Shown: piece after piece, positions 35,517 to 56,500 of the stretch
Layout of the letters: every line of letters starts with the position of its first letter
How positions within the stretch are numbered: the first letter of the stretch is position 1
Assembly: GCA_950097015.1 (NCBI GenBank)
Contig: CATNEN010000033.1
Coordinates: 3,968,001-4,032,000, forward strand
Reading direction: 5' to 3'
DNA length: 64,000 nucleotides
DNA from: Macrostomum hystrix
Taxonomy: Eukaryota > Animalia > Platyhelminthes
Translations under genes and position numbers: made by a program
The notes under the pieces: model-generated
The model's database searches: none
What the model saw: only the letters and a program-made list of their open reading frames with translations
What the model was told of the DNA's origin: nothing

Positions 35517-38500
35517 ACTCCTGGCCTCTCTGGGATTCGAAAGAGTGGACTAGACTGATCCCAGTGTAAAATATCCCCCCAGCCATTGGCAAATCAGTCG
35601 GCAGAAATCATGCAAATTTGCCTTAATTGTCTTAACTGCCTGCCGCTGCCGTCCACTCTGCTTGACTGCCCCTCGCCCTCCCCTACTCTATCCCGTGTAG
35701 TGAAAGTGGGAAAGTTAATTTTCTGCGTCACAGATGATGAGTGAGGCAGTGTTTTGGCATTGTGCCGCTATCAATTCGTTCCTCATGGGACTGGGTTTGG
35801 ATAGCCGTCATTGCGTTTCTCATTTATAATATTTTATTTGTGCCAACTGTGCGCTATAGTGGAGGCTGTGGGTCTTGGTGCTGCAAACTCATTTTTCAGT
35901 TTTTTTCTTGCCTAAGAAACATTTCAGACTTTATAATGCAAAAAAGTAATTTGTTATCTGCTAATTAGCTACTTTGGTGCCTGTTGATTATAAATAAACA
36001 TAATTTAACAAATAATAGTAAAGTGAGAAAATACTCGTACATAAACTGTTCTACGGCAGTAATCATTGAAAAGCAGTTTTAGACCGATAAATATTAATCC
36101 TCACATTGGTTACATAATCGAATAATTATTCTAACTGTCCTTACCGAACAAACAATTTCAACAGTAAATCAACTTCTTAGCTATTACCTGGTGACAGTTC
36201 TTAACAATGAAACTAGCTTTTTGTCTGCTTTTGCAACACATTTATTGTCACTGTCGAGAGGTCGTGACAACCCAGCCTGTTTACAATGCCTTGACACGTG
36301 TGTCAGAAGTGTGTCCCGTGGCATTTATTTGCTCAATTTGACTATAGTTGCCAATTGTATAGTTTCTTTATGAGGCTGACAATTCAACAGTAAAAAGCTT
36401 TTATATTGCTTGTAAATAATCTATTTTGTTTCTTATTTAAAGTCATTCTGTTTTACAATATCACAAGTTTTCGCAACCTATTTACCTACGAGAAAAATTT
36501 TAGCTTTTACGTTGACAACCCCACGTTCGATAAGCAGCTGGATGTCTTTTCTCTCTTTGTCATCAAAGTTAACTTCCGGATTCTTACACCACAGGATTCT
36601 GACTAGAGACAATACAGTCAGATTACAGGTAGCTTTACCAGGTGAACTGCCTGGTGACATTGCAGTCAGATTACAGGTAGCTTTACCAGGTGAACTGACT
36701 GGTGACATTGCAGTCAGATTACAGGTAGCTTTACCAGGTGAACTGACTGGTGACATTGCAGTCAGATTACAGGTAGCTTTAACAGGTGAACTGCCTGGTG
36801 ACATTGCAGTCAGATTACAGGTAGCTTTACCAGGTGAACTGACTGGTGACATTGCAGTCAGATTACAGGTAGGTTTATCAGGTGAACTGCCTGGTGACAT
36901 TGCAGTCAGATTACAGGTAGCTTTACCAGGTGAACTGACTGGTGACATTGCAGTCAGATTACAGGTAGCTTTACCAGGTGAACTGACTGGTGACATTGCA
37001 GTCAGATTACAGGTAGCTTTACCAAGTGAACTGACTGGTGACATTGCAGTCAGATTACAGGTAGCTTTACCAGGTGAACTGACTGGTGACATTGCAGTCA
37101 GATTACAGGTAGCTTTACCAGGTGAACTGACTGGTGACATTGCAGTCAGATTACAGGTAGCTTTACCAGGTGAACTGACTGGTGACATTGCAGTCAGATT
37201 ACAGGTAGCTTTAACAGGTGAACTGCCTGGTGACATTGCAGTCAGATTACAGGTAGCTTTACCAGGTGAACTGACTGGTGACATTGCAGTCAGATTACAG
37301 GTAGGTTTATCAGGTGAACTGCCTGGTGACATTGCAGTCAGATTACAGGTAGCTTTACCAGGTGAACTGACTGGTGACATTGCAGTCAGATTACAGGTAG
37401 CTTTACCAGGTGAACTGACTGGTGACATTGCAGTCAGATTACAGGTAGCTTTACCAAGTGAACTGACTGGTGACATTGCAGTCAGATTACAGGTAGCTTT
37501 ACCAGGTGAACTGCCTGGTGACATTGCAGTCAGATTACAGGTAGCTTTACCAGGTGAACTGACTGGTGACATTGCAGTCAGATTACAGGTAGCTTTACCA
37601 GGTGAACTGACTGGTGACATTGCAGTCAGATTACAGGTAGATTTACCAGGTGAACTGACTGGTGACATTGCAGTCAGATTACAGGTAGCTTTACCAGGTG
37701 AACTGACTGGTGACATTGCAGTCAGATTACAGGTAGCTTTACCAGGTGAACTGACTGGTGACATTGCAGTCAGATTACAGGTAGCTTTACCAGGTGAACT
37801 GCCTGGTGACATTGCAGTCAGATTACAGGTAGCTTTACCAGGTGAACTGACTGGTGACATTGCAGTCAGATTACAGGTAGCTTTACCAGGTGAACTGCCT
37901 GGTGACATTGCAGTCAGATTACAGGTAGCTTTACCAGGTAAACTGCCTGGTGACATTGCAGTCAGATTACAGGTAGCTTTACCAGGTGAACTGACTGGTG
38001 ACATTGCAGTCAGATTACAGGTAGCTTTACCAGGTGAACTGACTGGTGACATTGCAGTCAGATTACAGGTAGCTTTACCAGGTGAACTGACTGGTGACAT
38101 TGCAGTCAGATTACAGGTAGCTTTACCAGGTGAACTGACTGGAGACAATACAGTCAGATTACAGGTAGCTTTACCAGGTGAACTGACTGGTGACATTGCA
38201 GTCAGATTACAGGTAGGTTTATCAGGTGAACTGACTGGTGACATTGCAGTCAGATTACAGGTAGCTTTACCAGGTGAACTGACTGGTGACATTGCAGTCA
38301 GATTACAGGTAGCTTTACCAGGTGAACTGACTGGTGACATTGCAGTCAGATTACAGGTAGCTTTACCAGGTGAACTGACTGGTGACATTGCAGTCAGATT
38401 ACAGGTAGCTTTACCAGGTGAACTGACTGGTGACATTGCAGTCAGATTACAGGTAGCTTTACCAGGTGAACTGACTGGAGACATTGCAGTCAGATTACAG

Positions 38501-41500
38501 GTAGCTTTACCAGGTGAACTGACTGGAGACAATACAGACAGATTACAGGTAGGTTTATCAGGTGAACTGCCTGGTGACATTGCAGTCAGATTACAGGTAG
38601 CTTTACCAGGTGAACTGACTGGTGACATTGCAGTCAGATTACAGGTAGCTTTACCAGGTGAACTGACTGGTGACATTGCAGTCAGATTACAGGTAGCTTT
38701 AACAGGTGAACTGACTGGTGACATTGCAGTCAGATTACAGGTAGCTTTACCAGGTGAACTGACTGGTGACATTGCAGTCAGATTACAGGTAGCTTTACCA
38801 GGTGAACTGACTGGTGACATTGCAGTCAGATTACAGGTAGCTTTACCAGGTGAACTGACTGGAGACAATACAGTCAGATTACAGGTAGCTTTACCAGGTG
38901 AACTGCCTGGTGACATTGCAGTCAGATTACAGGTAGCTTTACAAGGTGAACTGCCTGGTGACATTGCAGTCAGATTACAGGTAGCTTTACAAGGTGAACT
39001 GCCTGGTGACATTGCAGTCAGATTACAGGTAGCTTTACAAGGTGAACTGCCTGGTGACATTGCAGTCAGATTACAGGTAGCTTTACCAGGTGAGTCAGAT
39101 TACAGTCAGTCAGATTACAGGTAGGTTTATCAGGTGAGTCAGATTACCTGCAGTCAGATTACAGGTAGGTTCAAGTAGTATATCCTAATAAATCTGTGAG
39201 CACACAGAATCTTTGCCCTTCGCCCGAGGCGCAAATCGCTGATTTGAGTCCCCGCTGAGATTTCGCAAAATCTGCTAGTTTGAGCAGTTGCGCAATTCGT
39301 TGATGGAATATTTCACCCTGCCAGCGAATGCACAGGCCACAGATTTAACTGCTACACAATGAGCGTGCGCCTGTGTTTCCATTCTCCTGGTCTGCAGTAT
39401 GGGAGAATTATCCCCCCTTAGGGCGTTGCGAGGCTCATTCTGAAGAGTTTGGCCCCGCACTGATAATGATTTGTCAAATTTCGCCGACAATCACACGACA
39501 GTTGGAATAGCAGAAATCATTCGCCTCATTCGAAAACACCCTTCTCACAATCGGAATATAAATTGGCGAATCTATGAAAGACATGACAAATATCCCATGT
39601 TGGGATGCATGAAGTTTTTGAGTAAAAAATGATTTTGGGAAAACTTCTCCTAATCGACGCGTGGCCCAGGCGCGGTTGCTGGGCTGTAATGAAAGCCCAA
39701 CTCGCATTTCTTATTGTCCCGGCTATTACGTGACAATTGGAATTGAAATGATGATGAAGAATGCCATTGCGGCCTGCCCGCCCACCCAGCTTTTCAATCC
39801 TGACCTTTGCCACGCCCCCCTCAACTCTCTCGCCCTGGATGGGGCGGGGCTACGTCTACTCCCGATTGAGTGAGTGCTCTGTGCGTGGCAATAGGCTGAT
39901 CATTTAAAATCAGTGTCAACGTTTAGTTTTTCAAAAGCATTTATTTCCATAGATATAATCAGCAGTTTCTATGAAGCTTGTCATTGTCATCGACAGACAT
40001 CATCTAGTTGTCAATACGGGCATTGTCTTTTTGTTAAAAAAGAAAATACAATTTTACACCGCTATCTCACCTGTTGCCTGATGGTGCTGTCGAGTAGGCT
40101 GAGCGTTGCTATGACAAAATCCGTGGCTGGGCCGCCCTGGGAGCACTGCTCCAACTGTTGTTAGTGTTTTTCTGGCTTGTTACACGGTTGCTGCTGCTGG
40201 CTGGCTGGCTGTCTGTATTTCACATTCAATTTGTGTTCCCGCTCTTGCCACAATAGCAGCCAGTAATATCTTCTCTCGGTTTTTTTTCTCCCTAACTGAA
40301 TTGGCAGCGCAAGTGTCAGCCAGCTGTTTGGGACTTATCTGTAGCTTTGTCCCAGCTCTCACTCCTCACTCACTCTCTCCTAGTCTCTCTTTTTATTTAT
40401 TCTTATAAGTCGTTCTAACTTAACTCGACAAGCAGCTAGTTTTTTAGTTTTATTTCTTTCAATATATTTCATGCGAATAGCCAAAGTTACCGCAATGTAG
40501 CGCATCGTGATCCCTTAACTCCTGATATTATCCTCGCCGTTGCACAAGGTCTTCCCTTCGTTCTCTTCCCGCTCCAGAGTTCTGAGTTAAAAATTTGCAA
40601 TTCTGCACAATTTTTTTTCTGCGTCAAATTAAGAATTACTTTCTTTTCATTTTCTGGATTCTTCAATTTAATCGAAAATGGAGAATGCTAAATGTGACAA
40701 AAAATTGTTGGCAGTGAATAGAACTTTTTGCCTTGCAATTCTTATTTTTTTGCAAGTGACTTAATTTGCGGCGATTATATCAAGTTCCAGTTTTCAAAAT
40801 ATTGATTTACTTCTTTTAACAGAAGCTTCAGGTTTTTTAAGTGAAGCGTCAGCGTTTTCAAAGGAAGCTTCAGGGTTTTCAATTGAAGCTTCAGGGTTTT
40901 CAAAGGAAGCTTCAGAGTTTTCAACTGAAGCTTCAGCGTTTTCAAAGGAAGCTTCATAGATTTAAAATGAAGCTTCAGGGTTTTCAATTGAAGCTTCAGG
41001 GTTTTCAATTTGAAGCTTCAGGTTTCTAACTGTAGCTTCAGGGTTTTCAACTGAAGCTTCAGGTATTTTAAGTGAAGCTTTCATAGTCTAAAAATGCTCC
41101 AGGTTTTAAGAAAAAATATTTGTGTCAGGGTCTTGAAATGGAGTTTTAGCTTTTTAAAAAGCCACTTTGTGATTTTGAATTCCTTCCACTAATATTCCCG
41201 CTAGTACGGTCTCCATATTTCAGTGTCCACAGGAAGCTAACTGGTCACAACATTCACACATTCTGACAGTCACAGTTTAGCCTCACAGCTTGCGTATCAG
41301 AAATCGGATACCTTCACCGCCGTAAAACCTGCGACCCCTCACAATTAGGATTAAATAACTCGGGGTGGCGAGTCCTGGCTCACTGTGGCATGGCTGGCAT
41401 ATGGTTAGCGACATCTATAGTAAGCCGCATTGCGGTTAGCCATTCGCCCGCATCCCACACCCTTCAGTTCGTCCCGCATCCGAAACATAGATTACAACGG

Positions 41501-44500
41501 ACAAGATGTCCAACTAGGGTCAATTGGTTTTGATGTGAGGAGGGATTTAGTTTTGTTTTTCATAGCTGGCTCCATAATGGATGTGGTTACATCAGCAGCA
41601 GCAGCAGCAGCAGCAGTAGTAGCAGTCTTAGCCCTGCGGGTTCGCCGTGATGAACTGATGAAGCTGGGAATTAGAGTCATGAAACTGAGAGTGAGAATGC
41701 TGTTGCATCAGCTCCTTCGAGCCCCGAAGCGATGGGAAAGAGCTTTGAGTAGCGCGAGGCACCGCGGGATAATAGTCTCACTAATTAGCAGCGTGTGGGC
41801 CTGCCCTGCCTCAGTCTTGTCGCTCCGCATCTGCCCTTTCAAATGCGGATTTGAAATCCATTTCCTCAGCAGCTCTCAGACTTTAATCTCCCTTACCCCC
41901 AGCACAGAAAATATTTCCCAGTCGAGACTTCTTTAGAGATTTCTTAGAAAGCTAAATTGCCACCTGCCTCATACCTGTTTCAACCCCACCGCCAAGTCGT
42001 TAATGATACCATTCAATTATTACAACTTTCTGTCTGCTGATAGATGACTGCAGACCTCTTTCCCAAACCCCAAGAAGCTGGGACTCTCCGGCTAGGATAG
42101 ATTTTTTACGCTTCTATAAATGCATAGGTAATTAGACAGCGCTTTCATTTTTAATGGCATGTTCAGCTAATTATTGAGATGAGCCCGATTAGGGGATGAG
42201 CTGCTCTCAGTGAGCACTCACTTGAGTCTAATTGACTCTCCTTGGCCTTTGCTCTGTCGAGCGGTAAATTGCACCCCTCAACCCTTCTGAGGGCTTCTCT
42301 ACCTGCTTCTCTACCTGCTTCTCTACCTGCTTCTCTACCTGCTTCTCTACCTGCTTCTCTACCTGCTTCTCTACCTGCTTGTCTCTCTGCTTCCCTCCCT
42401 GCTTCTCTACCTGCTTCTCTACCTGCTTCTCTACCTGCTTCTCTACCTGCTTCTCTACCTGCTTGTCTCTCTGCTTCCCTCCCTGCTTCTCTACATGCTT
42501 CTCTACCTGCTTCTCTACCTGCTTGTCTCTCTGCTTCCCTCCCTGCTTCTCTACATGCTTCTCTACCTGCTTCTCTACCTGCTTGTCTCTCTGCTTCCCT
42601 CCCTGCTTCTCTACCTGCTTCTCTACCTGCTTCTCTCCCTGCTTGTCTCTGCTTCTCTACCTGCTTCTCTCCCTGCTTCTCTACTTGCTTCTTTTCAAAA
42701 TATTTTTGTTACTACAATTGTACTCATAGCTCGATGCAGACAAAAATTTTCCTAGAAACTGTTGTCACCAAGTAGAGTAGATTGTTTAGTTATTTGTAGA
42801 ATTTACCACTTTCCTAGCTACAAAAGAGTACTCAAACTATTACGGTACCAAGAAAGTTTCACGAATTCTAAAAAAATAGTTTCGCAAAAAAGTCCAACTG
42901 CAAAAATTCGCGACATTTAATAAAAATATCGAAAAACGCTTGTCGCCTACTTCGAGTACTTAAAGTAGTTAACTGTATAAGCAATTCAATAATTCCAGGA
43001 GGCCATTGCCTACGCCGCTCAGGAGAATCTGCGTCTAGCAGAAACACCCGAAGCTGCAGCGGTTGTTGCCATGGCAACCCAGGCTGCGCCGGAGAATCCA
43101 CTGCTCAGGCGACTCCCGGATCCCGTTCGCGAGGCCTTCGCGCCGCTGCGTCGCTCGCGCTACCAAGTGGTCGCCTTCATCGACTGGAGCGGCATCGCCC
43201 ACCCCATCTTCACGGCGGCCAGCGGGCCCGCCTGCGCCTTCTCGAACTGGCTGCACCTGTGGTGCCGGTTTCTTATCACGCAGGTAAGTTCAAAAGGTGT
43301 TCAAAAGGGGGCCGGTGGCAGAGCGGTTAACGCGTTTACCTCTTGCACCAATGTCCCTAAGCTCGATTCCGCGGCGAGGCCACATTCATTTGGGGCGCAG
43401 CCGCAAAGGGTGGACTTAGGGGCTTGTCGTGCAATATACGCCCTTAAGGGCCAAGCTCCTTGGCTTAGTGAAATGTACACTGCCTGACGATGAGATGAAG
43501 AGTTTTGCGTGTTGATCAGACACACGAAACTCCCACTTCTAGACAATGGGGAACAATTGCCTAGGAATTTATAACAGTCACGTGACACTTACTGCAGTTT
43601 CTTCTTCTTCCTTGATAGTGAGTTGTTTGTAGTCTTTGTCTTCTTTGTCTTCCTGGTAGCTGCTTGAGTTTGTCTGTTGGCCAATAAATGACGAGAGCGA
43701 ATCAGATTACTTTTCGGTTTCCTCGAGCTCGGAATTCACAATAGAAACGTGCGCCCTAGTGAACAATTGAAATCTCTCTTGTATATCTCTAATAGGTCCT
43801 CCTGGAGGGCGTCTTCTTCGTTACCTCCGAAAGATAACGGATAACTCAAATCAAATCAATCAATAATCCTCTAGGAATGTATCCTAGGAAACAAGGAGGC
43901 CTTTCTCAAATGTATCGACGATATGTGGCTCTCGTAAACTTAGTTCAATTCAACAACTATTGCTAGCAATAAATTACTCTGTCTAGTAAAGCGCTTACCA
44001 CTTGTCTTTCCCTCAGAGATGAGTCCTCTTCTTCGTAAGGTGTTTTGAAGTCCGGTGGACCGCTCCGAGTCTGAATTTTTAGCTCGGATTTTCGCTTGTA
44101 TTTATAGTAAAATTTTGGGGAAAAACCGGTTCTACTACCGGGTGTTTACATTGGGCATACATGTTTGCACAGTGAGGTCAGACTTGTTTGATCAGCTGCG
44201 TTTTGGGGGGTTTTCAGGTGAACATTACCATATTTGGAATATTGTGTAAATACAGGTGCAGAAACCGATGAGTCATGTTTGCTTCAAGTAAATACAGCTG
44301 TCGAGAACCAGTTCTCCGATTTCATGTCACATGACTTGTTTCTAAAAATAGCGCATGACTCATTCCTAAAAATAGATTAAACATTATAGCTAAGGTTTCC
44401 TTGTGACATTACTTTAAGTAGCGCGTTAAGTAAAAACGTATTTTACAACTCTCTACAATATCTCCCTTTTTTACGAAAAATTCGTCCCGAATTTATTCTT

Positions 44501-47500
44501 GAGAGGAAAAGAAAATGACTTAGCTTAACAATAATAAGATAACATCACGTATTGACAGTATTGTACAGTTCGCCATGAGTTACATATCATACATTGGCGG
44601 AGATTTCCACGGCACAAAGGACAGTTTTTTAATGGTTTTTTGTAGTGTGCGAGGCTTAAGCAAGAACCGCAAACATGGTGTTTATTGACACATATACATG
44701 GTAGTTTACATGAGAATTCTTCAAGACAGACAGGACAGTCCATGGTAGTGTTCGCGAAAATTGTGTGGGCGTTTGCAGAGAACAGAGGTTTTAGTCGCCT
44801 TTTACGACAAGCTTGAGAAGCTGTAGTGCTATTCTTAATCCCGGTCACTACACGGGTAACAATAAACGAGTAATTTAACGCGGGCGTAGGTTATACGTAT
44901 GAGTATTTGGTGGTGTGTTTGTGGTTTGTGTCTCGGCATGTGCTGTTGCAATGTGCTTGTTTGTTGTTTTTGTGTGGTCTGGATTCTGTAACGTTGGAAG
45001 GAATGTAGTGTCGTTAGTGATGCGTTTTAAACGTTGAATGTGAACGTAGAACTGAGGTTGATGTGGATCCTGGATATTTGCAAGGCGTGCTGTTGTCGCG
45101 GATATCAGTCCTGTTACACGGAAAGGTCCTTTGTATTTGAAAGCATGCTTGTGCGTATGCTGTGCCGGGTAGTGTAGGTAGACGATATCTCCTACTTGTA
45201 AGGTAGAAGCATGATTACTTGTTGTAGGTACGGTAGATTGGTTGTCGAGATTATGTTTTGCAATTTGCCATGCTAGGTGTAATTGAGAAGTGAACTTTTG
45301 TAGCGTCGTCGGCGTGTCAACATATTGAGATGGCAGTAATTTCTGAACTAATAGATTCGGTGGTTGAAAGTCTCGAGAGAACATCAGAAAGAATGGTGTG
45401 TTCTCTGTTGAACGATGAACTGCGCTATTGTAGGCCATTGTCACGGATTGTATGTAAATAATCCAATCTTCAGGTTGTTTGTAAACAAAGTGTGTCAGCA
45501 TTTCATGTAGATTTCTGTGAAATCTTTCGACGAGGTTTGCTTTTGGATTATATGTCGAAGTGAATATTTGTTGAATATTCAGTAGTTTGGCGGCCTGTTG
45601 AAATAATTGCGATGTGAACTGTGTACCATTGTCAGATGTTAGCGTCTTAGGAGTTCCGAATTTGCAGATAATTTCATTATAGAAGGCCATTGCAACTGTT
45701 GTCGCTGTGATGTCAGGTATCGGAATGGCAACGGCGAATTTCGAAAAAACATCCAAGGCTGTAAGAATGTAGTTGTAGTCGATAGAGTGTTGTCGAGCCG
45801 GTGGTAGTGGTCCGGTAATGTCAATTGACACTGTGTCCCATGTAGTTGTCTTCGGCACTGATTGGAATTCAGGTTTTTGTCGTCTTCCGATTTTTGTTGA
45901 AGCACATGAGTGACATTGTGTGCAGTACTTGCGAATGTCTAAATTCATTGTTGGCCAAAAATAGAACTGGGCGACTCTCTGGATTGTTTTCTTGGCGGAT
46001 AAGTGTCCTGCTAATGGACTATCATGGAGTTCGTGTAGGATCGCTGAACGGAATGTGTAGGGTAGGTACAGTCGCGGAATATTGTTGTACACCCAGTAGA
46101 GTGCGAGTTCTCTGAAAACTAGACTATTTTTGTGTTTTCGTAAGAATTGTTTTTCGATTTTTGTAAGTTCATTTTCCGTTTCTTCTGTATCTTCTTGTAT
46201 GGCTTTGTAAAAGGAATCGTCTTGTTGTGCTTTCAACAAGTCTTTTATGGTTGGAATTGGATGAACTGCATTGATCTCGTATGTTCTGGACAGTGCATCA
46301 GCGGCTTTATTCATTGGCCCTGGTTTGTAAACCAGGTGAAAGTTGTAGTCCTGTATTTTGAGGACCATTCGGATGAGTCTATTGTTCGTCTGTCCTTTTG
46401 TTTTAACAACGTGAGTCAGCGGTGCATAATCTGTGCGAATGATAGTTGGCAGTGGTGATCCATAGATGTAGTAATGGAATTGTCGAAGAGCAAACAGAAC
46501 AGCTAGTAGTTCTCGTTCAGTGGCTGACCATTTTGTTTCGTTTGGTCTTAGCGCTCTGCTGATGTAAGCAATCGGTTTTTCTTTCTTTGGTTCCATTTCC
46601 TGAAGTAGTACGGCTCCTAATCCGCTTCCTGATGCGTCTGTTTCTATGATAAAAGGTTTGTGGAAGTTCGGGTGTTTGAGAAGAGCATCACTAGTTAGTT
46701 GCTGTTTGATTCTATCGAAACTTTCCTGTTGTTCCGCTTTCCAGTTGTCTTCTTTCCACTTTGGAATTTTTAGTAGTTCGTACAATGGTTTAGCCGTTTG
46801 TGCAAAGTTAGGTAGGAATTTTCGGAAATATTGTGCTAGTCCAAGGAATGACTGCAGTTTGGTAATTGACGTAGGTTTCGGGAACTTCTTGACCTTGTCG
46901 ACGTTATTTGGGTCAGGTGATATGCCTCGTGATGAGACGTGATGTCCAAGATATCGGACCGAATCTCTGCAGAATTTACATTTTGTTGGTTGCAGTTTTA
47001 GACCTTGTTGTCGGAGTAAGAAGAGAGCTTGTTCCATGACTTTTACTAGTTGTTCAAAGTTATTTCCAAAGGCAAGAATATCATCAACATAGTGAAGCAG
47101 ATTTGTACATCCGGCTAGCATATAGGCTGTAAGACGGCTCATTGTTGCTGGTGAGTTGGAGATTCCCATTGGACTTCTCTGATACGCGAAAACTTCTCCT
47201 TTGTAAGTTTTGAAGGCAGTGTATTGTTTTGATTCTTCTTCAAGTTCGATTTGCCAGAATCCATGTCGTAGGTCAAATACGGTGAAGAGTGTCGCCGTAT
47301 TGAGTCGTGCTAGCAGTTCTGAGATTTTTGGTAGACTTTGTTGATCGGTGGGAATGTACTTATTTAGGACTCGGAAATCACAGACGAGTCGTCTTTCGTT
47401 TGTTTCTTTCTTTTCGACAAGAAGGCAAGGTGAAGAATAAGCTGAGACGGTACGTTTTATGATTCCTGCTTTAAGCATTTTTTCTATGATTTCATCGAAG

Positions 47501-50500
47501 TGTTGCTGTAGGTGTTTAGCGACTGGATATGGTTTACATTGGATTGGTTCTTGATGAGGTAGCAGTTCAATTTTTTGCTTGATATCTCGAGCACATCCGA
47601 TGTCGTAATCGTGATGACAGAAGACGTCGTTATACTTCCACAATAGATCTTTAACTTGTGTTTTTTGTCCTTCAGTGATTGGACTTTGAGAAAGATCAAT
47701 TTGTTGTAGGAATTTTTGTTTAGACATTTTTGTTGTTGTGTCTGGTTGGATGAGCATTACCGAAGCTTGTGTGTTGAGATGTCCCATGCATGTTCCTGCA
47801 TAAATTTTTACTGGATGTTGATTTGGATTTATAATTTGTACTGGGATGTTTCTTTCCTTTGTGATAAGGACTAGAGCCGTTGGTATTAAAACTTCTTTTG
47901 TTGTGAGGATCTTCTTTCTTGGTTCAAATATCATAGCTTCTTCGACATCGTCATGATTGGCGAGATATGCTTTAACCCAACATGTACTTTCCGGCTGTAT
48001 GAAGACATCTTGTTTAATATGTACTTTTGGTTGAAGGTGAACTTGGCTGACTAAAGGATGTTCCACATTGTCCAGTTTGAATGTTTGTTTGTTAAAATCA
48101 AATGTTAATGGTAGATTCATCTGCCGAAATGTGTCGATTCCAATAATAACATCTTGGCTTGGAAGATGGTCAATAACAAATGCTTGTACCAGAAGTTGCT
48201 TGTTTGCAAGTTTAAGTGATATATTCACTTGTCCTAGGATATTAAGTGCATGTCCTCCGGCTCCAGCGACAGCGATTGAAGAAGGTCGCATATGAAGTTG
48301 CAATTTGTCGTAGAGTCTTTTTGTGATGACTGTGATTGAACTTCCTGAGTCGAGAAGTGCTTTACTGGGCATGTTGTTTATAAATACTTGAGCCATCGCT
48401 CTACCCATATTGGCTTGCAAGGTGCAAATGTAATTTGCTGGCCATTTTGGATCCGTTGGTAGAGGAGGAGATTTCGGCGGTGGTCTCGCTGTTCTGATTT
48501 CAATTTTTGGGTAAATATTTGATGCTTCTGGTTCTGGTGCTGTTGGCAATAATTGTTTTCTTTGATCTTGTAGTAGAGTTTCTTCAATTTTTTCGTTGAG
48601 TGTAGTAGTTTCTTGTTGTTTGTCAATTTGGAAAATCCGTTGTTTTGCTGGATAGGCTCGTGCTACACATCGTACTACTGTGATAAAGATCATTAGTGCA
48701 AGGTGAATCCATACAATGCATGCACTGGAGAAGATGAATCCCTGATAGTAACTTCCTTTTCCTTGGAGTAAATCGAGAAAGCTATTCGACCAAAAGGATC
48801 CTATTGCGTTATGTATGATGAATCCTGTCGAAAAGGATTGTTCTTTGTCCTGCTGGTTGTGTTGGGTAAAGAGCTTGTTCATCATCTGTCGTTGGGCGAT
48901 AAAAACTTGAAGAAAATCATTAATTGTCCATCCTGGTGTAATTTCGTCAAGTTTGATGTCACCAAATGGTTTATAGGTGGTCTTATTTATCTTGAGCTGT
49001 AGGTCCGATAGTTCGTATGTTTCGTCGATAATAGCTTGCATACCAGTGATGTTTGTAATGTGCCCAGTTGTTGAGACCTTGTGTAGTTTATTATTAATGT
49101 TGAAATAGTTGGCTGCGTCAGTGCAGGGTCTCGGGATTGCAGTTCCAACAATTATATTGTGCACAGTATCTAGAAATCCTTGAATTCGTTTCCCATTGTA
49201 GTAAGCTTCGATTCTGGGTTTATCGTAGCACGTAGTTGATGTGTTTGATGGCAAGATATTAAAATGATGCAGTGGCACACATTTGTAAATCAACAGATGG
49301 CCAGAGATGGGGATAGCTAAAGCATCTTGAATCCCTGTGATTTTTCTGAATGTAGACGTTGGATTGACATAATAGTTTTGTCGTGCATAGTTAAGTGCAG
49401 TTTCGTGCATTCTACAAGTCAGTTGGATCAGTGATTTGTGCAAGTAGTTTAGTTCTTTATGTAGGTTATGTTCCATTGCTGCGAGTTTTGCCGCTAGTAG
49501 TCGTGCAGAAACCATTGATGGTCTTTGTAGTTCTCTCTTTTTCCGAGCTGTGTTGGTTCTTGTTGAATAAGTACCATTGACCAGTCTCATAAAGGTATCC
49601 TCATCCATATCACGTAATTCGAGCGGTATCTCTTGTTCAGACACTAGAAGTTTTTTAGAGTTCTCCTTGCAGTTAATTTGGAGATACTTGGCTTTTTTTG
49701 GAAAAGTTAGGGCAAAATCCGACGTACTCGCAAGGAAGGTATTTGACAGTAGACTTCCTTTTATTGTATGGTACTTCTGGAATTTACAATCAATATTCGG
49801 TTCAACTTTCCATGCAACGAAGTACTGTCGTTGGTATTCTGTAATCTCATAGTATGGGCTGTGTCGATGTTCAATTTGCCATCTGTAATTTTGATGATAT
49901 GTTGGAGCCAGCGGTACTTGCCATACTGCTTCGTTCCAGAGTTTTGCTGTTTCGCAGAACCCTGTGTTGTACTTGCAATCTTCCATTGATAATTGTAGAG
50001 ATTCCATGTTTTCAAATGGATTGTGGTAAAACAAGACTTTCCGGATCAAGTAACTGTTTGTCGTGGTGTAACGTGGCCATATGTATTCGTTCCAATGGAC
50101 ATATCTACCGCTCGCACTGTTCTTGGTTCTGAAGAGTTGAGAGTTTCCAATTTTTTCATCGGCATGAAGTTCTCCATCTTTAGAAAATAATGTTTGGTTC
50201 CACTGAAGGCATTCTTCTTGTGTGACAGGCAGTGCTGTTTGCCAGAATCGGATGCGATTCCATTGGATGTACCAAACCTTTTCTAGTTCATGTTTATCTC
50301 GGAAACAGATAATACCATATTGTCTATGTTTCTTTGTGTTTGCTTTGTAGACATCGATCGTTAATGGAATAGGTTTTGTTTGATTAGTTTTAAAGTAACT
50401 GCACTTGATTTCCGTTGGTATTTTGTAGATGACTGGTTGGATGTTGGCATCAGTAGGACATATCATGGGCACTGAAGATGGTACAACTGTCGGGAGAAGT

Positions 50501-53500
50501 AACATCACGATGGCTGAAAACAACCATCTTATCAGTATGTGCCGTTTCTTTTTCTTCACTTTGGTTGGTGTTGTCGGTTTATTGGTGTTTATTGAGTATC
50601 GTTGGTCTTCTGTCTCTCCAATTGGTGGAGTAAGGCGCATAGAAAAGTGCCATGGGTTGTTGCATCCTGATGGTCTGGTTTGTTGGTTATACCAGGTTGG
50701 TTGTTTCATATTGAATGTTAATGGTGTATTGAGAGTTTGCAGTACGGTACTTGTAGTATCCGTTCTCATGTCGATCCACGTTGTTGGTTCATCATAGATA
50801 TGATCATCATCATTTTCCATCGACGTATTGTAGTCACTTTTAGTCTGAGAAGATCTATCGTGCTTCGAGTAGTATGATTCGGTATTCACTGCTTTATCGT
50901 GTCCATTCTGTCCTTCAGATGAATTGACATGGGTTATGTTTTCGTATTCGGGATCAGGTTTGTACTTGGGTGTCGAAGGCGGTGTCTCTGTCAAGTCGAT
51001 GTCATCGACTAAAATTTGTAACATGCTGATGTTTTCTTCAGACGTGTTGTGTGAATTTTTCGCACTGTGTTCCTCATTATTCCTTTCTGTGGATGTGGAC
51101 AATTCATCTATGCCTTCTTTGTTTTGCAGAATTTTTGAAAGATCACTCATCGTTGGAATTTTGAATAATCCTTTGATTTGTTGTTGTAATTGTTTTCGTT
51201 CAATGTGTTGACAGGTGTTGAAGGCAACACTTTCTCTTGGCGAGGGAATCGATAATTCTTCAAACAATGAACCCATTATGCAGCTGCTGTCGTTGCTTGT
51301 GTTGTCGTTCTGTATTTCCTGTGTTGACTCATTGTTGTAGTAAAAATTGTTTTCTTCTGTATCCTCTGTTTCCTTTTGTGGCATGGGCGGCTCTTTCGAA
51401 TGGTCGCTTTCGATTATAGTAATATAGGCTGCACCATCGTTGTCCAGATGAAGGTCATTGATTTCTTGCTCCTTCTTTTGTTTCTCAAGTTCATCAAGAA
51501 CATTGACAGAAAAGTCTGGCATAAGATCTTCAATCTTGAACTTTGGTTCAATAGTTTGAGTGTATTCAGGCTCAATAGCTTGAGTGTATTGTCGACGGAC
51601 TTGCGTTGGTTGTCTTGGAGGTGGAGGATTTCTTTGTTGACGATAAGGTACGATGGCATTAGATGGTCTGCTATCTTGTTGTCGACTATTTGTCCAATTA
51701 CGGTTTGAAGGCTGTCTTGGAGGATGAGTCCAATTGGTCTGTCTATTGTCATTGTACGAACGTGGGTTGCCACGTGATCTGCAGTCTCTAGCATAATGAC
51801 CGATCCTTCCACAGGTATAGCAAGTTGATGTGTGCAAGTATCTCTGTTGTGGTTGTGGATAGGAATATCTCTGCTGTTGTGGTACAATAGCAGAAGTTTG
51901 GTGTTGCTGCATGAGTTTGCTTAATTGTTCTGCCAGTTGTGTCGTGTCACTATTATGAGTAGTCATAAGAGGTGCGCTAGCTTCCCATTGCATTCCACAA
52001 CGGAGCAATTGTTCCTCTGTGTTAATAGTTTCTCTCAGCAGTCTATCTCGCAAAGTAGGCTGTGCGTTGTTAATCACATGAAGTATTAAACTTTGTTCCC
52101 GGTCTTCAAGACGTTGTCTTTCTCGTGCAGCTGATTCGGCAGGTCCTATAGGTTGCGCTCCTTGATCCAATGGTGGAGGCTGATGTAATGCTTTGATGAT
52201 CTTACGGATGTCATCAACAAAGGTGAGAAAACTCTCAGTGGGACTCATTTTTCGATTATGAAGTTTATGAAGGAGTACCGATCTGTTTGTTCCACATCGT
52301 GCGAATTGTGCTCTCAGTTGGGTAACTAGAGCTTGATAATCTTGTTGTACTGCAGCTGTCAATTTTCCATAGATTTCTCGAGCTGTTCCTTGTAACAGTG
52401 GAGGTAGGAGGAGTGCTTTCTCTGCATTCTGTAATCCATATTCGCGTGAGACCAAATCAAAGTGATCAATGAATGTGTTGAAATCTTTATCCATTGTATA
52501 CATTCCGACCGTTTCCTTAATGTCACGATGGACCTGATAGTTTCTTCGTGCCATATTCGCAACTGGGAACGGAAATAATTCAAGTTCTGGATCGATGTTC
52601 AAGGGTTCGTCCAGATTGACTTCTCTGACAAGATTTAGTGTGAATAAAAAGTGTGTGTGTGTGCGTGTGCGTGTGTATCAGCAAATTGAAAATGGTTTAC
52701 ACAGAGGAATTATTTACTCAGGACAAGGGAGAAAAATTTATACAAAGCAGGGAACGTATGCCGCTTTTAACGCTGAAAAGGGGTTATTGAAATGTGAGCC
52801 GGTGAGTTCAGTCGCGCGATTCCCAGATGTGCAAACAATAGAGCGAAGTGACGCGTGTGGCTTATGTGCAAACAATATCCGGTAGGGACAGCAAAAATTT
52901 TTCAGAGGTATGACGCAACAAAATTTTTATGAAACGGTGGATCAAGGGCAATAATGATGAGTTGCAAAAAATGGTTTCTTTTTACTTTTTTGTTAAAACG
53001 ATTCGAAAGTTGTAACGCAAAAAATTTTAGTATCTCGGCCTGGGCTTGATTGCAGGGCCTGGGCTTGATTGCAGGGCCTGGGCGAGATCACCAGTTGAAG
53101 AGTTTTGCGTGTTGATCAGACACACGAAACTCCCACTTCTAGACAATGGGGAACAATTGCCTAGGAATTTATAACAGTCACGTGACACTTACTGCAGTTT
53201 CTTCTTCTTCCTTGATAGTGAGTTGTTTGTAGTCTTTGTCTTCTTTGTCTTCCTGGTAGCTGCTTGAGTTTGTCTGTTGGCCAATAAATGACGAGAGCGA
53301 ATCAGATTACTTTTCGGTTTCCTCGAGCTCGGAATTCACAATAGAAACGTGCGCCCTAGTGAACAATTGAAATCTCTCTTGTATATCTCTAATAGGTCCT
53401 CCTGGAGGGCGTCTTCTTCGTTACCTCCGAAAGATAACGGATAACTCAAATCAAATCAATCAATAATCCTCTAGGAATGTATCCTAGGAAACAAGGAGGC

Positions 53501-56500
53501 CTTTCTCAAATGTATCGACGATATGTGGCTCTCGTAAACTTAGTTCAATTCAACAACTATTGCTAGCAATAAATTACTCTGTCTAGTAAAGCGCTTACCA
53601 CTTGTCTTTCCCTCAGAGATGAGTCCTCTTCTTCGTAAGGTGTTTTGAAGTCCGGTGGACCGCTCCGAGTCTGAATTTTTAGCTCGGATTTTCGCTTGTA
53701 TTTATAGTAAAATTTTGGGGAAAAACCGGTTCTACTACCGGGTGTTTACATTGGGCATACATGTTTGCACAGTGAGGTCAGACTTGTTTGATCAGCTGCG
53801 TTTTGGGGGGTTTTCAGGTGAACATTACCATATTTGGAATATTGTGTAAATACAGGTGCAGAAACCGATGAGTCATGTTTGCTTCAAGTAAATACAGCTG
53901 TCGAGAACCAGTTCTCCGATTTCATGTCACATGACTTGTTTCTAAAAATAGCGCATGACTCATTCCTAAAAATAGATTAAACATTATAGCTAAGGTTTCC
54001 TTGTGACATTACTTTAAGTAGCGCGTTAAGTAAAAACGTATTTTACAACTCTCTACAGAGAAAGTCAGGGCTGATGTACACACCTGTGTGAGCGTGTGCC
54101 TGCGTACAGTATCTGTGTGCGTGTGTGCTCAGGAGTCAGCGAAATGGGTAGAATTGCCTCCTCGCTGGCTGCGGGTCTAGTGTCACCAAATGATGTGCCA
54201 TTGCCCACAGCCCTCCTGCGATTATTATTTGATATAATTATAATTTTTATTATTATTATCAATTTTATTATTAATATTACAGAGAGTTCTAATTTTAGCT
54301 CAAGGGAAGCTAGTTGTGTCTTTGGACAAGAAAATGACCCATTGCTTGCTCTCACCCAGCTGTAAAATGTGTACCAGCATCAGCTGGGGAAGAAATTTAG
54401 GTCCACGTACTGGACAGCTGTACACAGCCTTTTGGTGTGGGATTTCAAGGAAATCTTCAAGCTTGCTGCGCTTCTCCCCTCAGATCGAGGATTGCCGCAT
54501 CTCGGCCATGGTGAAGCCATGCGAGGCTCTGCTTCACGAGGACCGGGCCGACACCGCCTTCGCAGCCTTCCTGCTGCCGCAGCTCATTCTGCAGCTTGTC
54601 ATGGAGGGCCGGCCAGAGAAGTGCCGCCTGGTGAGTCGCCCCTCTGGCCTGACCCCACTGACTCCCACCGACAGTAGCCCGTTTCCTGCCGGTCTTAATC
54701 TTCGTCCGTTTCCTCAATGGTCTCTTCGTCCGTTTCCTCAATGGTCTCTTCGTCCGTTTCCTCAATGGTCTCTTCGTCCGTTTCCTCAATGGTCTCTTCG
54801 TCCGTTTCCTCAATGGTCTCTTCGTCCGTTTCCTCAATGGTCTCTTCGTCCGTTTCCTCAATGGTCTCTTCGTCCGTTTCCTCAATGGTCTCTTCGTCCG
54901 TTTCCTCAATGGTCTCTTCGTCCGTTTCCTCAATGGTCTCTTCGTCCGTTTCCTCAATGGTCTCTTCGTCCGTTTCCTCAATGGTCTCTTCGTCCGTTTC
55001 CTTAATGGTCTCTTCGTCCGTTTCCTCAATGGTCTCTTCGTCCGTTTCCTCAATGGTCTCTTCGTCCGTTTCCTCAATGGTCTCTTCGTCCGTTTCCTCA
55101 ATGGTCTCTTCGTCCGTTTCCTCAATGGTCTCTTCGTCCGTTTCCTCAATGGTCTCTTCGTCCGTTTCCTCAATGGTCTCTTCGTCCGTTTCCTCAATTG
55201 TCTCTTTGAAGGGTTTTTTAGTCCGGTTCCCTCATTGCTTCACCTATTCTCCAGATCAAGGAGGAGATGCTGGCGGTGCTGAACTCGGTGGTGTCGGACC
55301 GGCCGGACGGCCTTCTGTCGGACAATCAGCTCTCCAAACAGACCGGGTCGGCGGGAGAGCAGCCGCAGCTGGACCGGGCCAACCTGTTCGCCCAGACTGT
55401 CTTCTCTATTATCGACTTCTTCTACGGCTGGACTCGGCAGCATTTGAACCAGCTGAAGGCGGCTGCGGCTGCGGCGGCTTCGTCCGCAGCAGCGACAACA
55501 GCGACTGCGGCCAAGGGCGAGGCCAACCATGAGAGCTACAGGCGGGCCTGCCAGTTCCTGGCCGACGTGCCGCAGACTCTGCTGGCAAGGGCGGCGTACA
55601 GCTGCCGGGCGGACACCAGGGCGCTGCGGCACTGGGAGCTGGCGCATCGGGAGCAGCCGCCCGAGCTGCGCAGGGCCTCGCTCAGGACAATGGCTCAGGT
55701 TTGGGCGCCTTGATAATCCACGGTGTGGGATAATTCAAGGTGTGAGATAATCCAAGCTGTGGGATAATCCAAGCTGTGGGATAATCCAAGCTGTGGGATA
55801 ATCCAAGCTGTGGGATAATCCAAGCTGCGGGATAATCCAAGCTGTGGGATAATCCAAGGTGTCGGATAATCCAAGCTGTGGGATAATCCATGGTGAGGGA
55901 TAATCCAAGATGTGGGATAATCCAAGGTGAGGGATAATCCAAGATGTAGGATTATCCAAGGCGTGGGATAACCCAAGGTGAGGGATAATCCTGGGATAAT
56001 GGTGTCAGAGCAGTTTATGCTGTGTAAACTTGCATCACATTCTCACCATGACTGCCCGTCCCAACCCGCCGGCCCGCAGGTGTACACCTCCTTGGGCGAA
56101 TCGGATGCCGTTGCCGGCGTCTTCGCCTGCCTGTCCGGCCGGGACCTGGATATCCGATCCCGCATCCTGCGGCTGGAGAACTCCGGCCAGCTGCCGCAGG
56201 CTCTGGTTGCCTACGACGTGGCGATTCGTTCCGAGGCCGGCAGAGACGACCTGGCGCTGCACCTGGGCCTGCTCCGCTGTGAGCTGGACAGCGCCAGCCT
56301 GCTCAATGCCGTCCAGAAGGCCGACTGGTTCCTCAGGCGCCGGCCGGACTGGGCGCCGCAGTTGAACTCCGTGCGGGCCGAGGCGCTGTGCAAGCTGGGA
56401 CAGTGGCAGCAGCTGCGGTCCGTTGTGCCCTGCGACAGCTGGGAAACCGACAGGGGTCAGGCTGGACACGTGAGACTGCCTTTCATACCTGTTGGTCATT

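What the first reader, a model, noticed from the sequence alone, without database searches (positions are those of the whole stretch)
44525..44743. Retrotransposon-borne RING-finger accessory gene in the position normally occupied by env
Seen: 132 nt after the integrase stop, ACTACC-ATG-G opens [45 protein letters not shown]..., an exact C3HC4 spacing with Siah-like C-x3-H, ending about 50 nt before the PPT. Established: RING-HC domains are E3 ubiquitin ligases, and DNA viruses use small RING proteins (herpes ICP0, baculovirus IE2/PE38) against host restriction; RING accessory genes are not a standard Ty3/gypsy feature. Inference: a counter-defence factor, perhaps against silencing or restriction proteins. 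Together with the gB-like env, this gives a retroelement with a herpes-like entry plus ubiquitin toolkit.
Basis: partly seen in the sequence, partly recalled or inferred. Interest (0 to 1): 0.82.

Follow-up and report, generated by a model that had tools for sequence, protein, structure and literature searches.

The report
RING-finger gene in flatworm retroelement
A very young, intact virus-like retroelement, probably of a Macrostomum flatworm, carries a small gene after its polymerase gene for a RING zinc-finger domain of the type ubiquitin ligases use; I found no such gene described for these elements, but this copy is a shortened form and its activity is unproven.

Summary
A 72-aa ORF (44525-44743) starts 131 nt after the pol stop, in the context ACTACCATGG, and ends 52 nt before the polypurine tract of a 10,562-bp LTR element (43496-54057) with identical 962-bp LTRs and a GAGA target duplication. 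The C3HC4 pattern is not chance: it occurs once in six frames of the window and in 0 of 200 simulated windows. An exhaustive HMMER search found four unnamed relatives of 130-229 aa. All eight zinc ligands and the E2-contact Pro and Arg are invariant among them. A family profile matches solved RING E3 domains (TRIM21, E = 1.2e-5). The relatives are tandem-RING proteins with a tail, and the window copy is a short form: one full RING and an incomplete second module.

The element does have an env. It is a class III fusion glycoprotein inside the gag-pol frame, the GAG-ENV-POL order already published for flatworm errantiviruses. No kinship to herpesvirus or baculovirus RING proteins was found. A counter-defence role is untested.

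Whether sister elements carry the ORF was not tested. That step, fetching sister proviruses, was left out and referred. Verdict: a real RING gene in an unusual place; function open.

The parts
43496..54057 (-). Whole LTR retroelement, 10,562 bp, Ty3/gypsy type with env (errantivirus-like), order GAG-ENV-POL-RING
   Evidence: Identical LTRs and target duplication; domain content
53096..54057 (-). 5' LTR, 962 bp, TG...CA
   Evidence: 962/962 identical to the 3' LTR
43496..44457 (-). 3' LTR, 962 bp
54058..54061 (.). Target-site duplication GAGA, upstream copy
43492..43495 (.). Target-site duplication GAGA, downstream copy
53076..53093 (-). Putative primer-binding site, starting TGG 2 nt after the 5' LTR; the tRNA was not identified
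   Evidence: Read from the sequence
44875..52602 (-). Single uninterrupted gag-env-pol ORF, 2575 codons, first Met at 52554; 0 stops and 0 frameshifts
51778..51825 (-). Gag zinc knuckle (zf-CCHC)
   Evidence: Pfam E = 1.7e-6
48583..50565 (-). Env-like segment (polyprotein aa 680-1340) with a signal-like and a C-terminal TM-like hydrophobic stretch; class III viral fusion glycoprotein
   Evidence: PF24664 Monjiviricetes_fusion, E = 1e-6, 27.5 bits against cutoff 27; homologous segment upstream of PR in sisters P0029 and P0012; hydrophobic stretches read
48106..48402 (-). Aspartic protease
46936..47415 (-). Reverse transcriptase
   Evidence: RVT_1, E = 3.6e-28
46345..46743 (-). RNase H
   Evidence: RT_RNaseH and RT_RNaseH_2
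45544..46062 (-). Integrase (H2C2 zinc domain plus catalytic core)
44744..44874 (-). 131-nt spacer between the pol stop and the RING ATG; no ATG; the best pyrimidine-preceded AG is at 44849-44848 (candidate acceptor, inferred only)
44525..44743 (-). RING ORF, 72 aa plus stop; short form of a tandem-RING family (one C-terminal shortening relative to its relatives; kind not determinable)
44612..44737 (-). Complete first RING-HC domain (aa 3-44), followed by the linchpin-position Arg45
   Evidence: Eight ligands, Pro42 and Arg45 invariant in alignment A1; RING E3 hits
44492..44497 (-). AATAAA between the RING stop and the purine tract; none in the LTR
44461..44472 (-). Polypurine tract, 3 nt upstream of the 3' LTR

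Best explanation
The 72-aa ORF is a genuine RING-HC (C3HC4) gene. It is carried as a post-pol accessory ORF by a very recently inserted, fully open GAG-ENV-POL errantivirus-like Ty3/gypsy element, whose host is probably a Macrostomum flatworm.

It belongs to a very small, unnamed family of tandem-RING proteins: two C3HC4 modules plus a tail of about 100 aa. The window copy is a short form with one complete RING, an incomplete second module and no tail.

Shown: the coding potential, the homology, the constraint on the zinc ligands and E2-contact positions across the family, and the position inside the element.

Inferred:
- The protein binds two zinc ions and recruits a ubiquitin-conjugating enzyme through the conserved hydrophobic residue of loop 1 (V/I5), Pro42 and the basic 'linchpin' Arg45.
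- It is translated from its own AUG, the first after pol and in a strong context, on a subgenomic RNA. That RNA would be made by cis-splicing or by spliced-leader trans-splicing, which Macrostomum uses, to an acceptor in the 131-nt spacer.
- Lacking the family's tail, this copy would act as a minimal E2-recruiting module, possibly with a partner, rather than as a complete substrate-specific ligase.

A role against host restriction or silencing is possible, but no evidence here bears on it.
For: - ORF, context and position.
- Pattern is unique in the window and absent from 200 simulations.
- Homologues: P0001 at E = 6.5e-17 and 55-60% identity; P0002, P0007 and P0011 at 31-37%.
- Ligand columns invariant 8/8 against 3/35 non-ligand columns (Fisher p = 1e-6). 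None of the 24 differences from P0001 falls on the 14 key positions (P = 5e-4).
- Family profile against solved structures: 27 RING E3 domains at E <= 0.01, best TRIM21 at 1.2e-5; the second module matches the MAT1 and BRE1 RINGs.
- The N-terminus of the ORF coincides with the N-termini of its relatives.
- The ORF's composition matches the element (G 0.17, GC 0.38 against 0.40) better than the rest of the window (GC 0.48).
- The element is intact and young: identical LTRs, target duplication, one 2575-codon ORF.
- SL trans-splicing is documented in M. lignano (PMC8629364, seen).
Against: - The window ORF alone stays below every Pfam RING cutoff.
- AF2 gave pLDDT 51 for it. The fold search with the relative's model gave only weak E-values of 0.02 or worse.
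- The copy is much shorter than its relatives (72 against 130-229 aa), with an incomplete second module. The missing part appears nowhere else in the window, in any frame.
- With identical LTRs, the open frame in this copy says nothing about selection since insertion.
- The family has only four other members among 1.84 billion representatives, each on one or two short unnamed contigs. Their genomic context is unknown.
- None of 69 pol relatives lists a RING Pfam domain.
- No evidence of expression, and no canonical donor motif found in the leader.
Confidence: 0.5

Rival explanations
1. Passenger remnant. The ORF is a truncated piece of a tandem-RING gene, from the host or from an ancestral longer accessory ORF. 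This element family carries it in its 3' untranslated region, and it is no longer used. It looks intact only because the first RING has not yet decayed and the insertion is very young.
For: The ORF is 72 aa against 130-229 aa in all relatives. The second module is incomplete and the conserved tail is absent. No remaining similarity lies downstream in any frame. Identical LTRs mean no time for decay since insertion. No RING is listed among 69 pol relatives. There is no evidence of expression.
Against: All 14 key positions, including the first three cysteines of module 2, are kept despite 24 differences from the nearest relative. The ORF retains the family's own N-terminus, with the first AUG after pol in a strong context and no upstream AUG in 131 nt. 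Its composition fits the element, which argues against a very recent pick-up.
Confidence: 0.35
2. The RING is expressed as a C-terminal extension of integrase, through a ribosomal frameshift or a splice at the end of pol, rather than as a separate protein.
For: The RING frame is open for 49 codons upstream of the ATG and overlaps the last codons of pol.
Against: The overlap is only about five codons and holds no slippery heptamer. The relatives start at the same N-terminus as free-standing proteins. No pol relative carries a RING domain.
Confidence: 0.03
3. Chance ORF: a cysteine-rich reading frame in non-coding 3' sequence that happens to mimic a RING.
For: The Pfam scores for the ORF are below threshold, and the AF2 model is poor.
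Against: The pattern appears in 0 of 200 simulated windows. The homologue P0001 scores E = 6.5e-17 against 1.84 billion proteins. Ligand conservation has p = 1e-6. The profile matches solved RING domains.
Confidence: 0.02

Closest known systems
GAG-ENV-POL errantiviruses (env-carrying Ty3/gypsy) of Platyhelminthes, Nematoda and Bryozoa (eLife 2026, PMC13524379)
   Same: It is an LTR element with gag, a class III (HSV/gB-type in that paper) env, and pol, in the order GAG-ENV-POL. It is a flatworm-type element: the best pol hit is an M. lignano 'Retrovirus-related polyprotein' at 71% identity. It is young and intact.
   Different: The paper mentions no RING, zinc-finger or accessory ORF after pol. 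Here gag, env and pol share one uninterrupted frame. Pfam places the env nearest PF24664 (Monjiviricetes fusion glycoprotein), not a herpesvirus gB model.
Cellular RING-HC E3 ligase domains (TRIM21, TRIM5, TRIM25, BRCA1, RING1B/RING2, UHRF1)
   Same: C3HC4 ligand order, a hydrophobic residue in loop 1, Pro after ligand 7, and a basic residue after ligand 8. These are the best hits of the ORF and of the family profile.
   Different: Similarity is generic, with E-values from 1e-5 to 1e-2. There is no B-box, coiled coil or other partner domain. The spacing is C-x3-H. The ORF is 72 aa in all. The family architecture is RING-RING-tail.
SIAH/Sina E3 ligases
   Same: C-x3-H spacing. Weak Sina_RING matches: E = 0.38 for the window ORF and 3.6e-4 for relative P0002. 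An aphid sina-like protein (P0008) is among the weak hits.
   Different: There is no Sina zinc-finger or substrate-binding domain, and all scores are below the cutoff.
Additional ORFs captured by LTR retrotransposons (bdelloid rotifers, PMC5408684; plant aORFs, PMC7264820; abstracts seen)
   Same: An extra ORF inside an LTR element besides gag and pol.
   Different: A RING domain did not turn up among such extra ORFs in the searches I ran. I read only the abstracts of these two papers.
   Same: A RING domain encoded by a virus-like genome. Arenavirus Z appears among the weak generic RING fold matches of the relative's model.
   Different: No ICP0-type or IE2/PE38-type protein came back as a named hit in the solved-structure, family or protein searches. 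There is no evidence of common descent.

Membership tests
RING-HC (C3HC4) zinc finger | Eight zinc ligands in the order C-C-C-H-C-C-C-C, with spacing that allows the cross-brace | tested here: met
   C3, C6, C18, H22, C25, C28, C41 and C44 are all invariant in the five-sequence alignment. The extra cysteines C12 and C16 are not conserved.
RING-HC (C3HC4) zinc finger | Score above the curated cutoff of a Pfam RING model | tested here: not met
   Window ORF: zf-RING_2 16.5 bits against 27.3. Best relative, P0002: zf-C3HC4_3 26.6 bits against 27.
RING-HC (C3HC4) zinc finger | Significant profile similarity to solved RING domains | tested here: met
   The family profile gives 27 RING E3 chains at E <= 0.01, best TRIM21 at 1.2e-5. 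The single sequence matches the BRCA1 RING at E = 0.003.
RING-HC (C3HC4) zinc finger | RING cross-brace fold | tested here: inconclusive
   The AF2 model of the window ORF has pLDDT 51. The relative's tandem core is modelled at pLDDT 67-86, but Foldseek hits to RING domains reach only E >= 0.02.
RING-type E3 ubiquitin ligase | E2-contact residues: hydrophobic residue in loop 1, Pro after ligand 7, basic linchpin after ligand 8 | tested here: met
   V/I at position 5 in all five sequences; Pro42 and Arg45 invariant. The roles of these residues come from established knowledge of RING-E2 complexes.
RING-type E3 ubiquitin ligase | Ubiquitin-transfer activity | not testable with these tools
   No computation here can show activity.
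SIAH/Sina family | Sina RING plus Sina zinc fingers and a TRAF-like substrate-binding domain | tested here: not met
   Sina_RING E = 0.38. No Sina_ZnF in the ORF or in relatives P0001, P0002 or P0007.
Env-carrying Ty3/gypsy element (errantivirus-like), GAG-ENV-POL type | LTRs, target duplication, polypurine tract, gag zinc knuckle, PR-RT-RNase H-IN in Ty3/gypsy order | tested here: met
Env-carrying Ty3/gypsy element (errantivirus-like), GAG-ENV-POL type | Viral fusion glycoprotein between gag and pol | tested here: met
   PF24664 at 27.5 bits against cutoff 27, E = 1e-6, which is only just above threshold. A homologous segment is present in two sister polyproteins. The order matches PMC13524379.
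Accessory gene of a retroelement family | Present at the same position, and intact, in sister copies and sister families | not tested
   There is no second copy in the window. Fetching sister elements from public assemblies was left out and referred.
Accessory gene of a retroelement family | Transcribed and translated | not testable with these tools
   Only sequence signals are available: first AUG after pol, strong context, candidate acceptor.
Viral RING regulators (herpesvirus ICP0 family, baculovirus IE2/PE38) | Detectable sequence kinship of the RING and its flanking regions | tested here: not met
   No such protein is among the hits. All 60 listed structure hits at E <= 10 are cellular.

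The most novel reading that the evidence does not exclude
Flatworm GAG-ENV-POL errantiviruses encode their own RING ubiquitin-ligase module after pol. It would be a lineage-specific accessory gene that recruits a host E2 to mark a host restriction or silencing factor, or an element protein, for ubiquitination. That would be the first retrotransposon-encoded E3 of this kind and a parallel to the RING regulators of large DNA viruses. The tandem-RING relatives would be the full-length versions in sister elements.
Probability: 0.12. Interest if true: 0.85.

Novelty: new variant of a known kind. Interest (0 to 1): 0.55.

Why it matters
LTR retroelements are known to pick up extra ORFs, and env-carrying Ty3/gypsy elements with the GAG-ENV-POL order are now known from flatworms. 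I found no report of a RING ubiquitin-ligase domain inside such an element.

If the ORF is conserved and expressed in sister elements, endogenous retrovirus-like elements of invertebrates would be manipulating the host ubiquitin system with a gene of their own. That strategy is so far associated with exogenous viruses. It would also give a defined small protein with which to look for the host factors that restrain these elements.

If the ORF is only a decaying passenger, it is still a dated example of gene-fragment carriage by a young element.

Tried and rejected
- Word-based protein search with the 72-aa ORF found nothing in the 40-126 aa band. The same search with P0001 found only P0001 itself.
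- A second copy of the ORF or of the element in the window: none.
- Continuation of the family similarity downstream of the stop, or elsewhere in the window, in another frame or as a further exon: none. All significant similarity lies in one frame within outer bounds 44555-44764.
- Integrase-RING fusion by frameshift: the overlap is too short and has no slippery site.
- AF2 model of the window ORF: pLDDT 51, not used for a fold search.
- Fold search with the relative's model: only weak RING matches.
- Kinship with viral RING proteins: none found.
- The two 860-870-aa ORFs on opposite strands at 36.5-39.1 kb are artefacts of a 48-bp satellite, and their Pfam hits are spurious.
- Heat-shock elements in the LTR, as in some M. 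lignano families: none found.
- My first Pfam call on polyprotein pieces failed because my coordinates were out of frame. I repeated it correctly.
Full report
**1. What is there**

The feature is on the minus strand. Read in that direction, an ATG at 44743 opens a 72-codon frame that stops at 44525-44527.
- The ATG sits in the context ACTACCATGG. It is the first ATG after the stop codon of a 2575-codon ORF (44875-52602).
- The 131-nt spacer between that stop and the ATG holds no ATG in any frame.
- The ORF ends 52 nt before a 12-nt purine tract (44461-44472). That tract lies 3 nt from the start of the 3' LTR.

**2. The element**

Two 962-bp repeats at 53096-54057 and 43496-44457 are identical at every base. 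They begin TG and end CA, and are flanked by a 4-bp duplication, GAGA. A TGG-initiated candidate primer-binding site starts 2 nt after the 5' LTR.

The single long ORF carries these Pfam domains:

| Domain | Polyprotein residues |
|---|---|
| Gag zinc knuckle | 260-275 |
| Aspartic protease | 1401-1499 |
| Reverse transcriptase | 1730-1889 |
| RNase H | 1954-2086 |
| Integrase | 2181-2353 |

About 1000 residues lie between gag and protease.
- Residues 680-1340 begin with a signal-like hydrophobic stretch and end with a TM-like one.
- They match PF24664, a viral class III fusion glycoprotein family of the Monjiviricetes, at E = 1e-6. The score is 27.5 bits, just above the cutoff of 27.
- Two sister polyproteins have a homologous segment directly upstream of their protease. 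One is annotated 'Retrovirus-related polyprotein' of Macrostomum lignano and is 71% identical over PR-IN. The other is a 3074-aa protein.

The element is therefore a 10,562-bp, env-carrying Ty3/gypsy element with the order GAG-ENV-POL. Its host is probably a Macrostomum flatworm.

That order, with an HSV/gB-type env, has been published for errantiviruses of Platyhelminthes, Nematoda and Bryozoa (PMC13524379).

Breaks: the gag-env-pol ORF has none (0 stops, 0 frameshifts). The RING ORF has one C-terminal shortening relative to its relatives.

**3. Is the RING real?**

The ligand pattern is C-x2-C-x11-C-x3-H-x2-C-x2-C-x12-C-x2-C.

Chance is excluded. A stop-free RING-HC pattern occurs once in all six frames of the window, and in none of 200 simulated 64-kb sequences.

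By itself the ORF is only a sub-threshold match:
- zf-RING_2: 16.5 bits against a cutoff of 27.3.
- Sina_RING: E = 0.38.
- BRCA1 RING: E = 0.003 among solved structures.

The word-indexed protein search found nothing. I therefore ran the exhaustive HMMER search of 1.84 billion representatives. It found:
- one clear relative, P0001 (206 aa, E = 6.5e-17, 55-60% identity);
- two more distant ones, P0002 (130 aa) and P0007 with its cluster-mate P0011 (214 and 229 aa), at 31-37% identity;
- beyond these, only generic RING proteins.

In the five-sequence alignment:
- All eight proposed ligands are invariant, whereas the additional cysteines C12 and C16 are not.
- Pro42 and Arg45 are also invariant, and position 5 is V or I throughout. 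In characterised RING E3s these are the E2-contact positions and the 'linchpin' position (established knowledge).

The constraint can be counted:
- Ligand columns are invariant 8 of 8, against 3 of 35 non-ligand columns (Fisher p = 1e-6).
- None of the 24 differences from P0001 hits any of 14 key positions (P = 5e-4 if differences fell at random).

A profile of the family matches 27 solved RING E3 domains at E <= 0.01. The best is TRIM21 at 1.2e-5, followed by TRIM5, TRIM25, TRIM32, UHRF1, RING1B/RING2 and BRCA1. The family's second module matches the MAT1 and BRE1 RINGs.

Structure prediction added little:
- The window ORF was modelled at pLDDT 51.
- The tandem core of P0001 was modelled at pLDDT 67-86 and gave only RING domains as fold matches, at E >= 0.02.

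**4. What the relatives show**

P0001, P0002 and P0007 have two C3HC4 modules in tandem. P0001 and P0007 add a tail of about 100 residues with shared motifs.

The window ORF begins at the same N-terminus. It has the whole first RING, but only an incomplete second module and no tail. The missing part is not found anywhere else in the window, in any frame. All significant similarity lies in one frame, within outer bounds 44555-44764.

The window copy is thus a short form. I cannot tell whether by loss or by never having had the rest.

The family is very rare. Each relative sits on one or two unnamed Logan contigs of 1.2-2.1 kb, and P0001 has no closer kin in the 5.8-billion-cluster collection. 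None of 69 pol relatives lists a RING among its Pfam domains.

**5. How it may work**

Shown: a coding sequence for a zinc-ligand-complete RING, with E2-contact residues, inside a young intact element.

Inferred:
- *Product.* A small E2-recruiting ubiquitin-ligase module.
- *Translation.* A 2575-codon ORF lies upstream, so translation from the genomic RNA is unlikely. A subgenomic RNA is needed.
- *Candidate acceptor.* The spacer has an AG at 44849-44848, preceded by a pyrimidine-rich run.
- *Trans-splicing.* Macrostomum uses spliced-leader trans-splicing (PMC8629364), which could put this AUG first.
- *Poly(A) signal.* An AATAAA lies just after the ORF (44492-44497), and there is none in the LTR.
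- *Frameshift fusion.* A fusion to integrase is unlikely: the frames overlap by about five codons, without a slippery site.
- *Composition.* The ORF resembles the element rather than the surrounding DNA. This is weak evidence that it has been in the element for some time.

Without the family's tail, substrate choice is unexplained. The main rival is that this copy is a decaying passenger.

**6. Comparison with the known**

The element belongs with the published flatworm GAG-ENV-POL errantiviruses. That paper mentions no RING, zinc-finger or accessory ORF. Nor did searches for RING domains in LTR retrotransposons turn one up.

The RING is closest to cellular RING-HC domains, in a generic way.

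They did not come back as hits in any search. Only the arenavirus Z protein appears, among weak generic fold matches. 'Siah-like' amounts to the C-x3-H spacing and weak Sina_RING scores.

**7. Steps left out, and a slip**

These would be env-carrying proviruses of animals, and I could not tell whether the bar on fetching a virus of animals covers them.

**8. Verdict**

The interpretation as an element-borne accessory gene is plausible but unproven. The 'herpes-like toolkit' reading is not supported. The interest lies in an apparently undescribed combination: a RING gene after pol in a flatworm GAG-ENV-POL errantivirus. That interest is tempered by the short form of this copy and by the untested conservation.

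Noticed in passing
window 44875-52602 (-), env-like part 48583-50565: Gag, a class III fusion glycoprotein and pol lie in one uninterrupted 2575-codon frame. The signal-like segment of the env part is therefore internal to a polyprotein. How the glycoprotein reaches the secretory pathway (a subgenomic RNA or processing) is unexplained. Sisters P0029 and P0012 share the ENV-POL fusion.
   Followed up: partly
window 50566-51585 (-): About 340 residues between the gag zinc knuckle region and the env-like part have no family match. They look acidic, Ser/Thr/Asn-rich and low in complexity.
   Followed up: partly
window 44492-44497 (-): The only AATAAA near the 3' end lies between the RING stop and the purine tract. 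The 962-bp LTR has no AATAAA or ATTAAA.
   Followed up: no
window 36599-39137: A 48-bp satellite of 53 copies at 96% identity creates 860- and 870-aa ORFs on opposite strands. Their Pfam hits (Bactofilin, YTV and others) are spurious.
   Followed up: yes
window 1-64000: The window outside the element is crowded with more than 30 minisatellite arrays, with periods of 11-68 bp. Most of the long ORFs listed there lie on these arrays.
   Followed up: partly
window 58475-59365 (+): An ORF matches ATR-type HEAT repeats (PF23593, E = 5e-23). It is probably an exon of a host ATR-like kinase gene, about 4.4 kb from the element and on the opposite strand.
   Followed up: no
window 43308-43487 and 57469-57649: A 180-bp stretch next to the 3' LTR is 87% identical to a stretch 3.4 kb beyond the 5' LTR, so a dispersed repeat lies on both sides of the insertion.
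   Followed up: no
proteins P0005 and P0009 (hits): Two unnamed proteins of about 330 aa have an N-terminal signal-like segment and two RING modules of similar pattern. They are only weakly related to the window ORF, and their origin is unknown.
   Followed up: no
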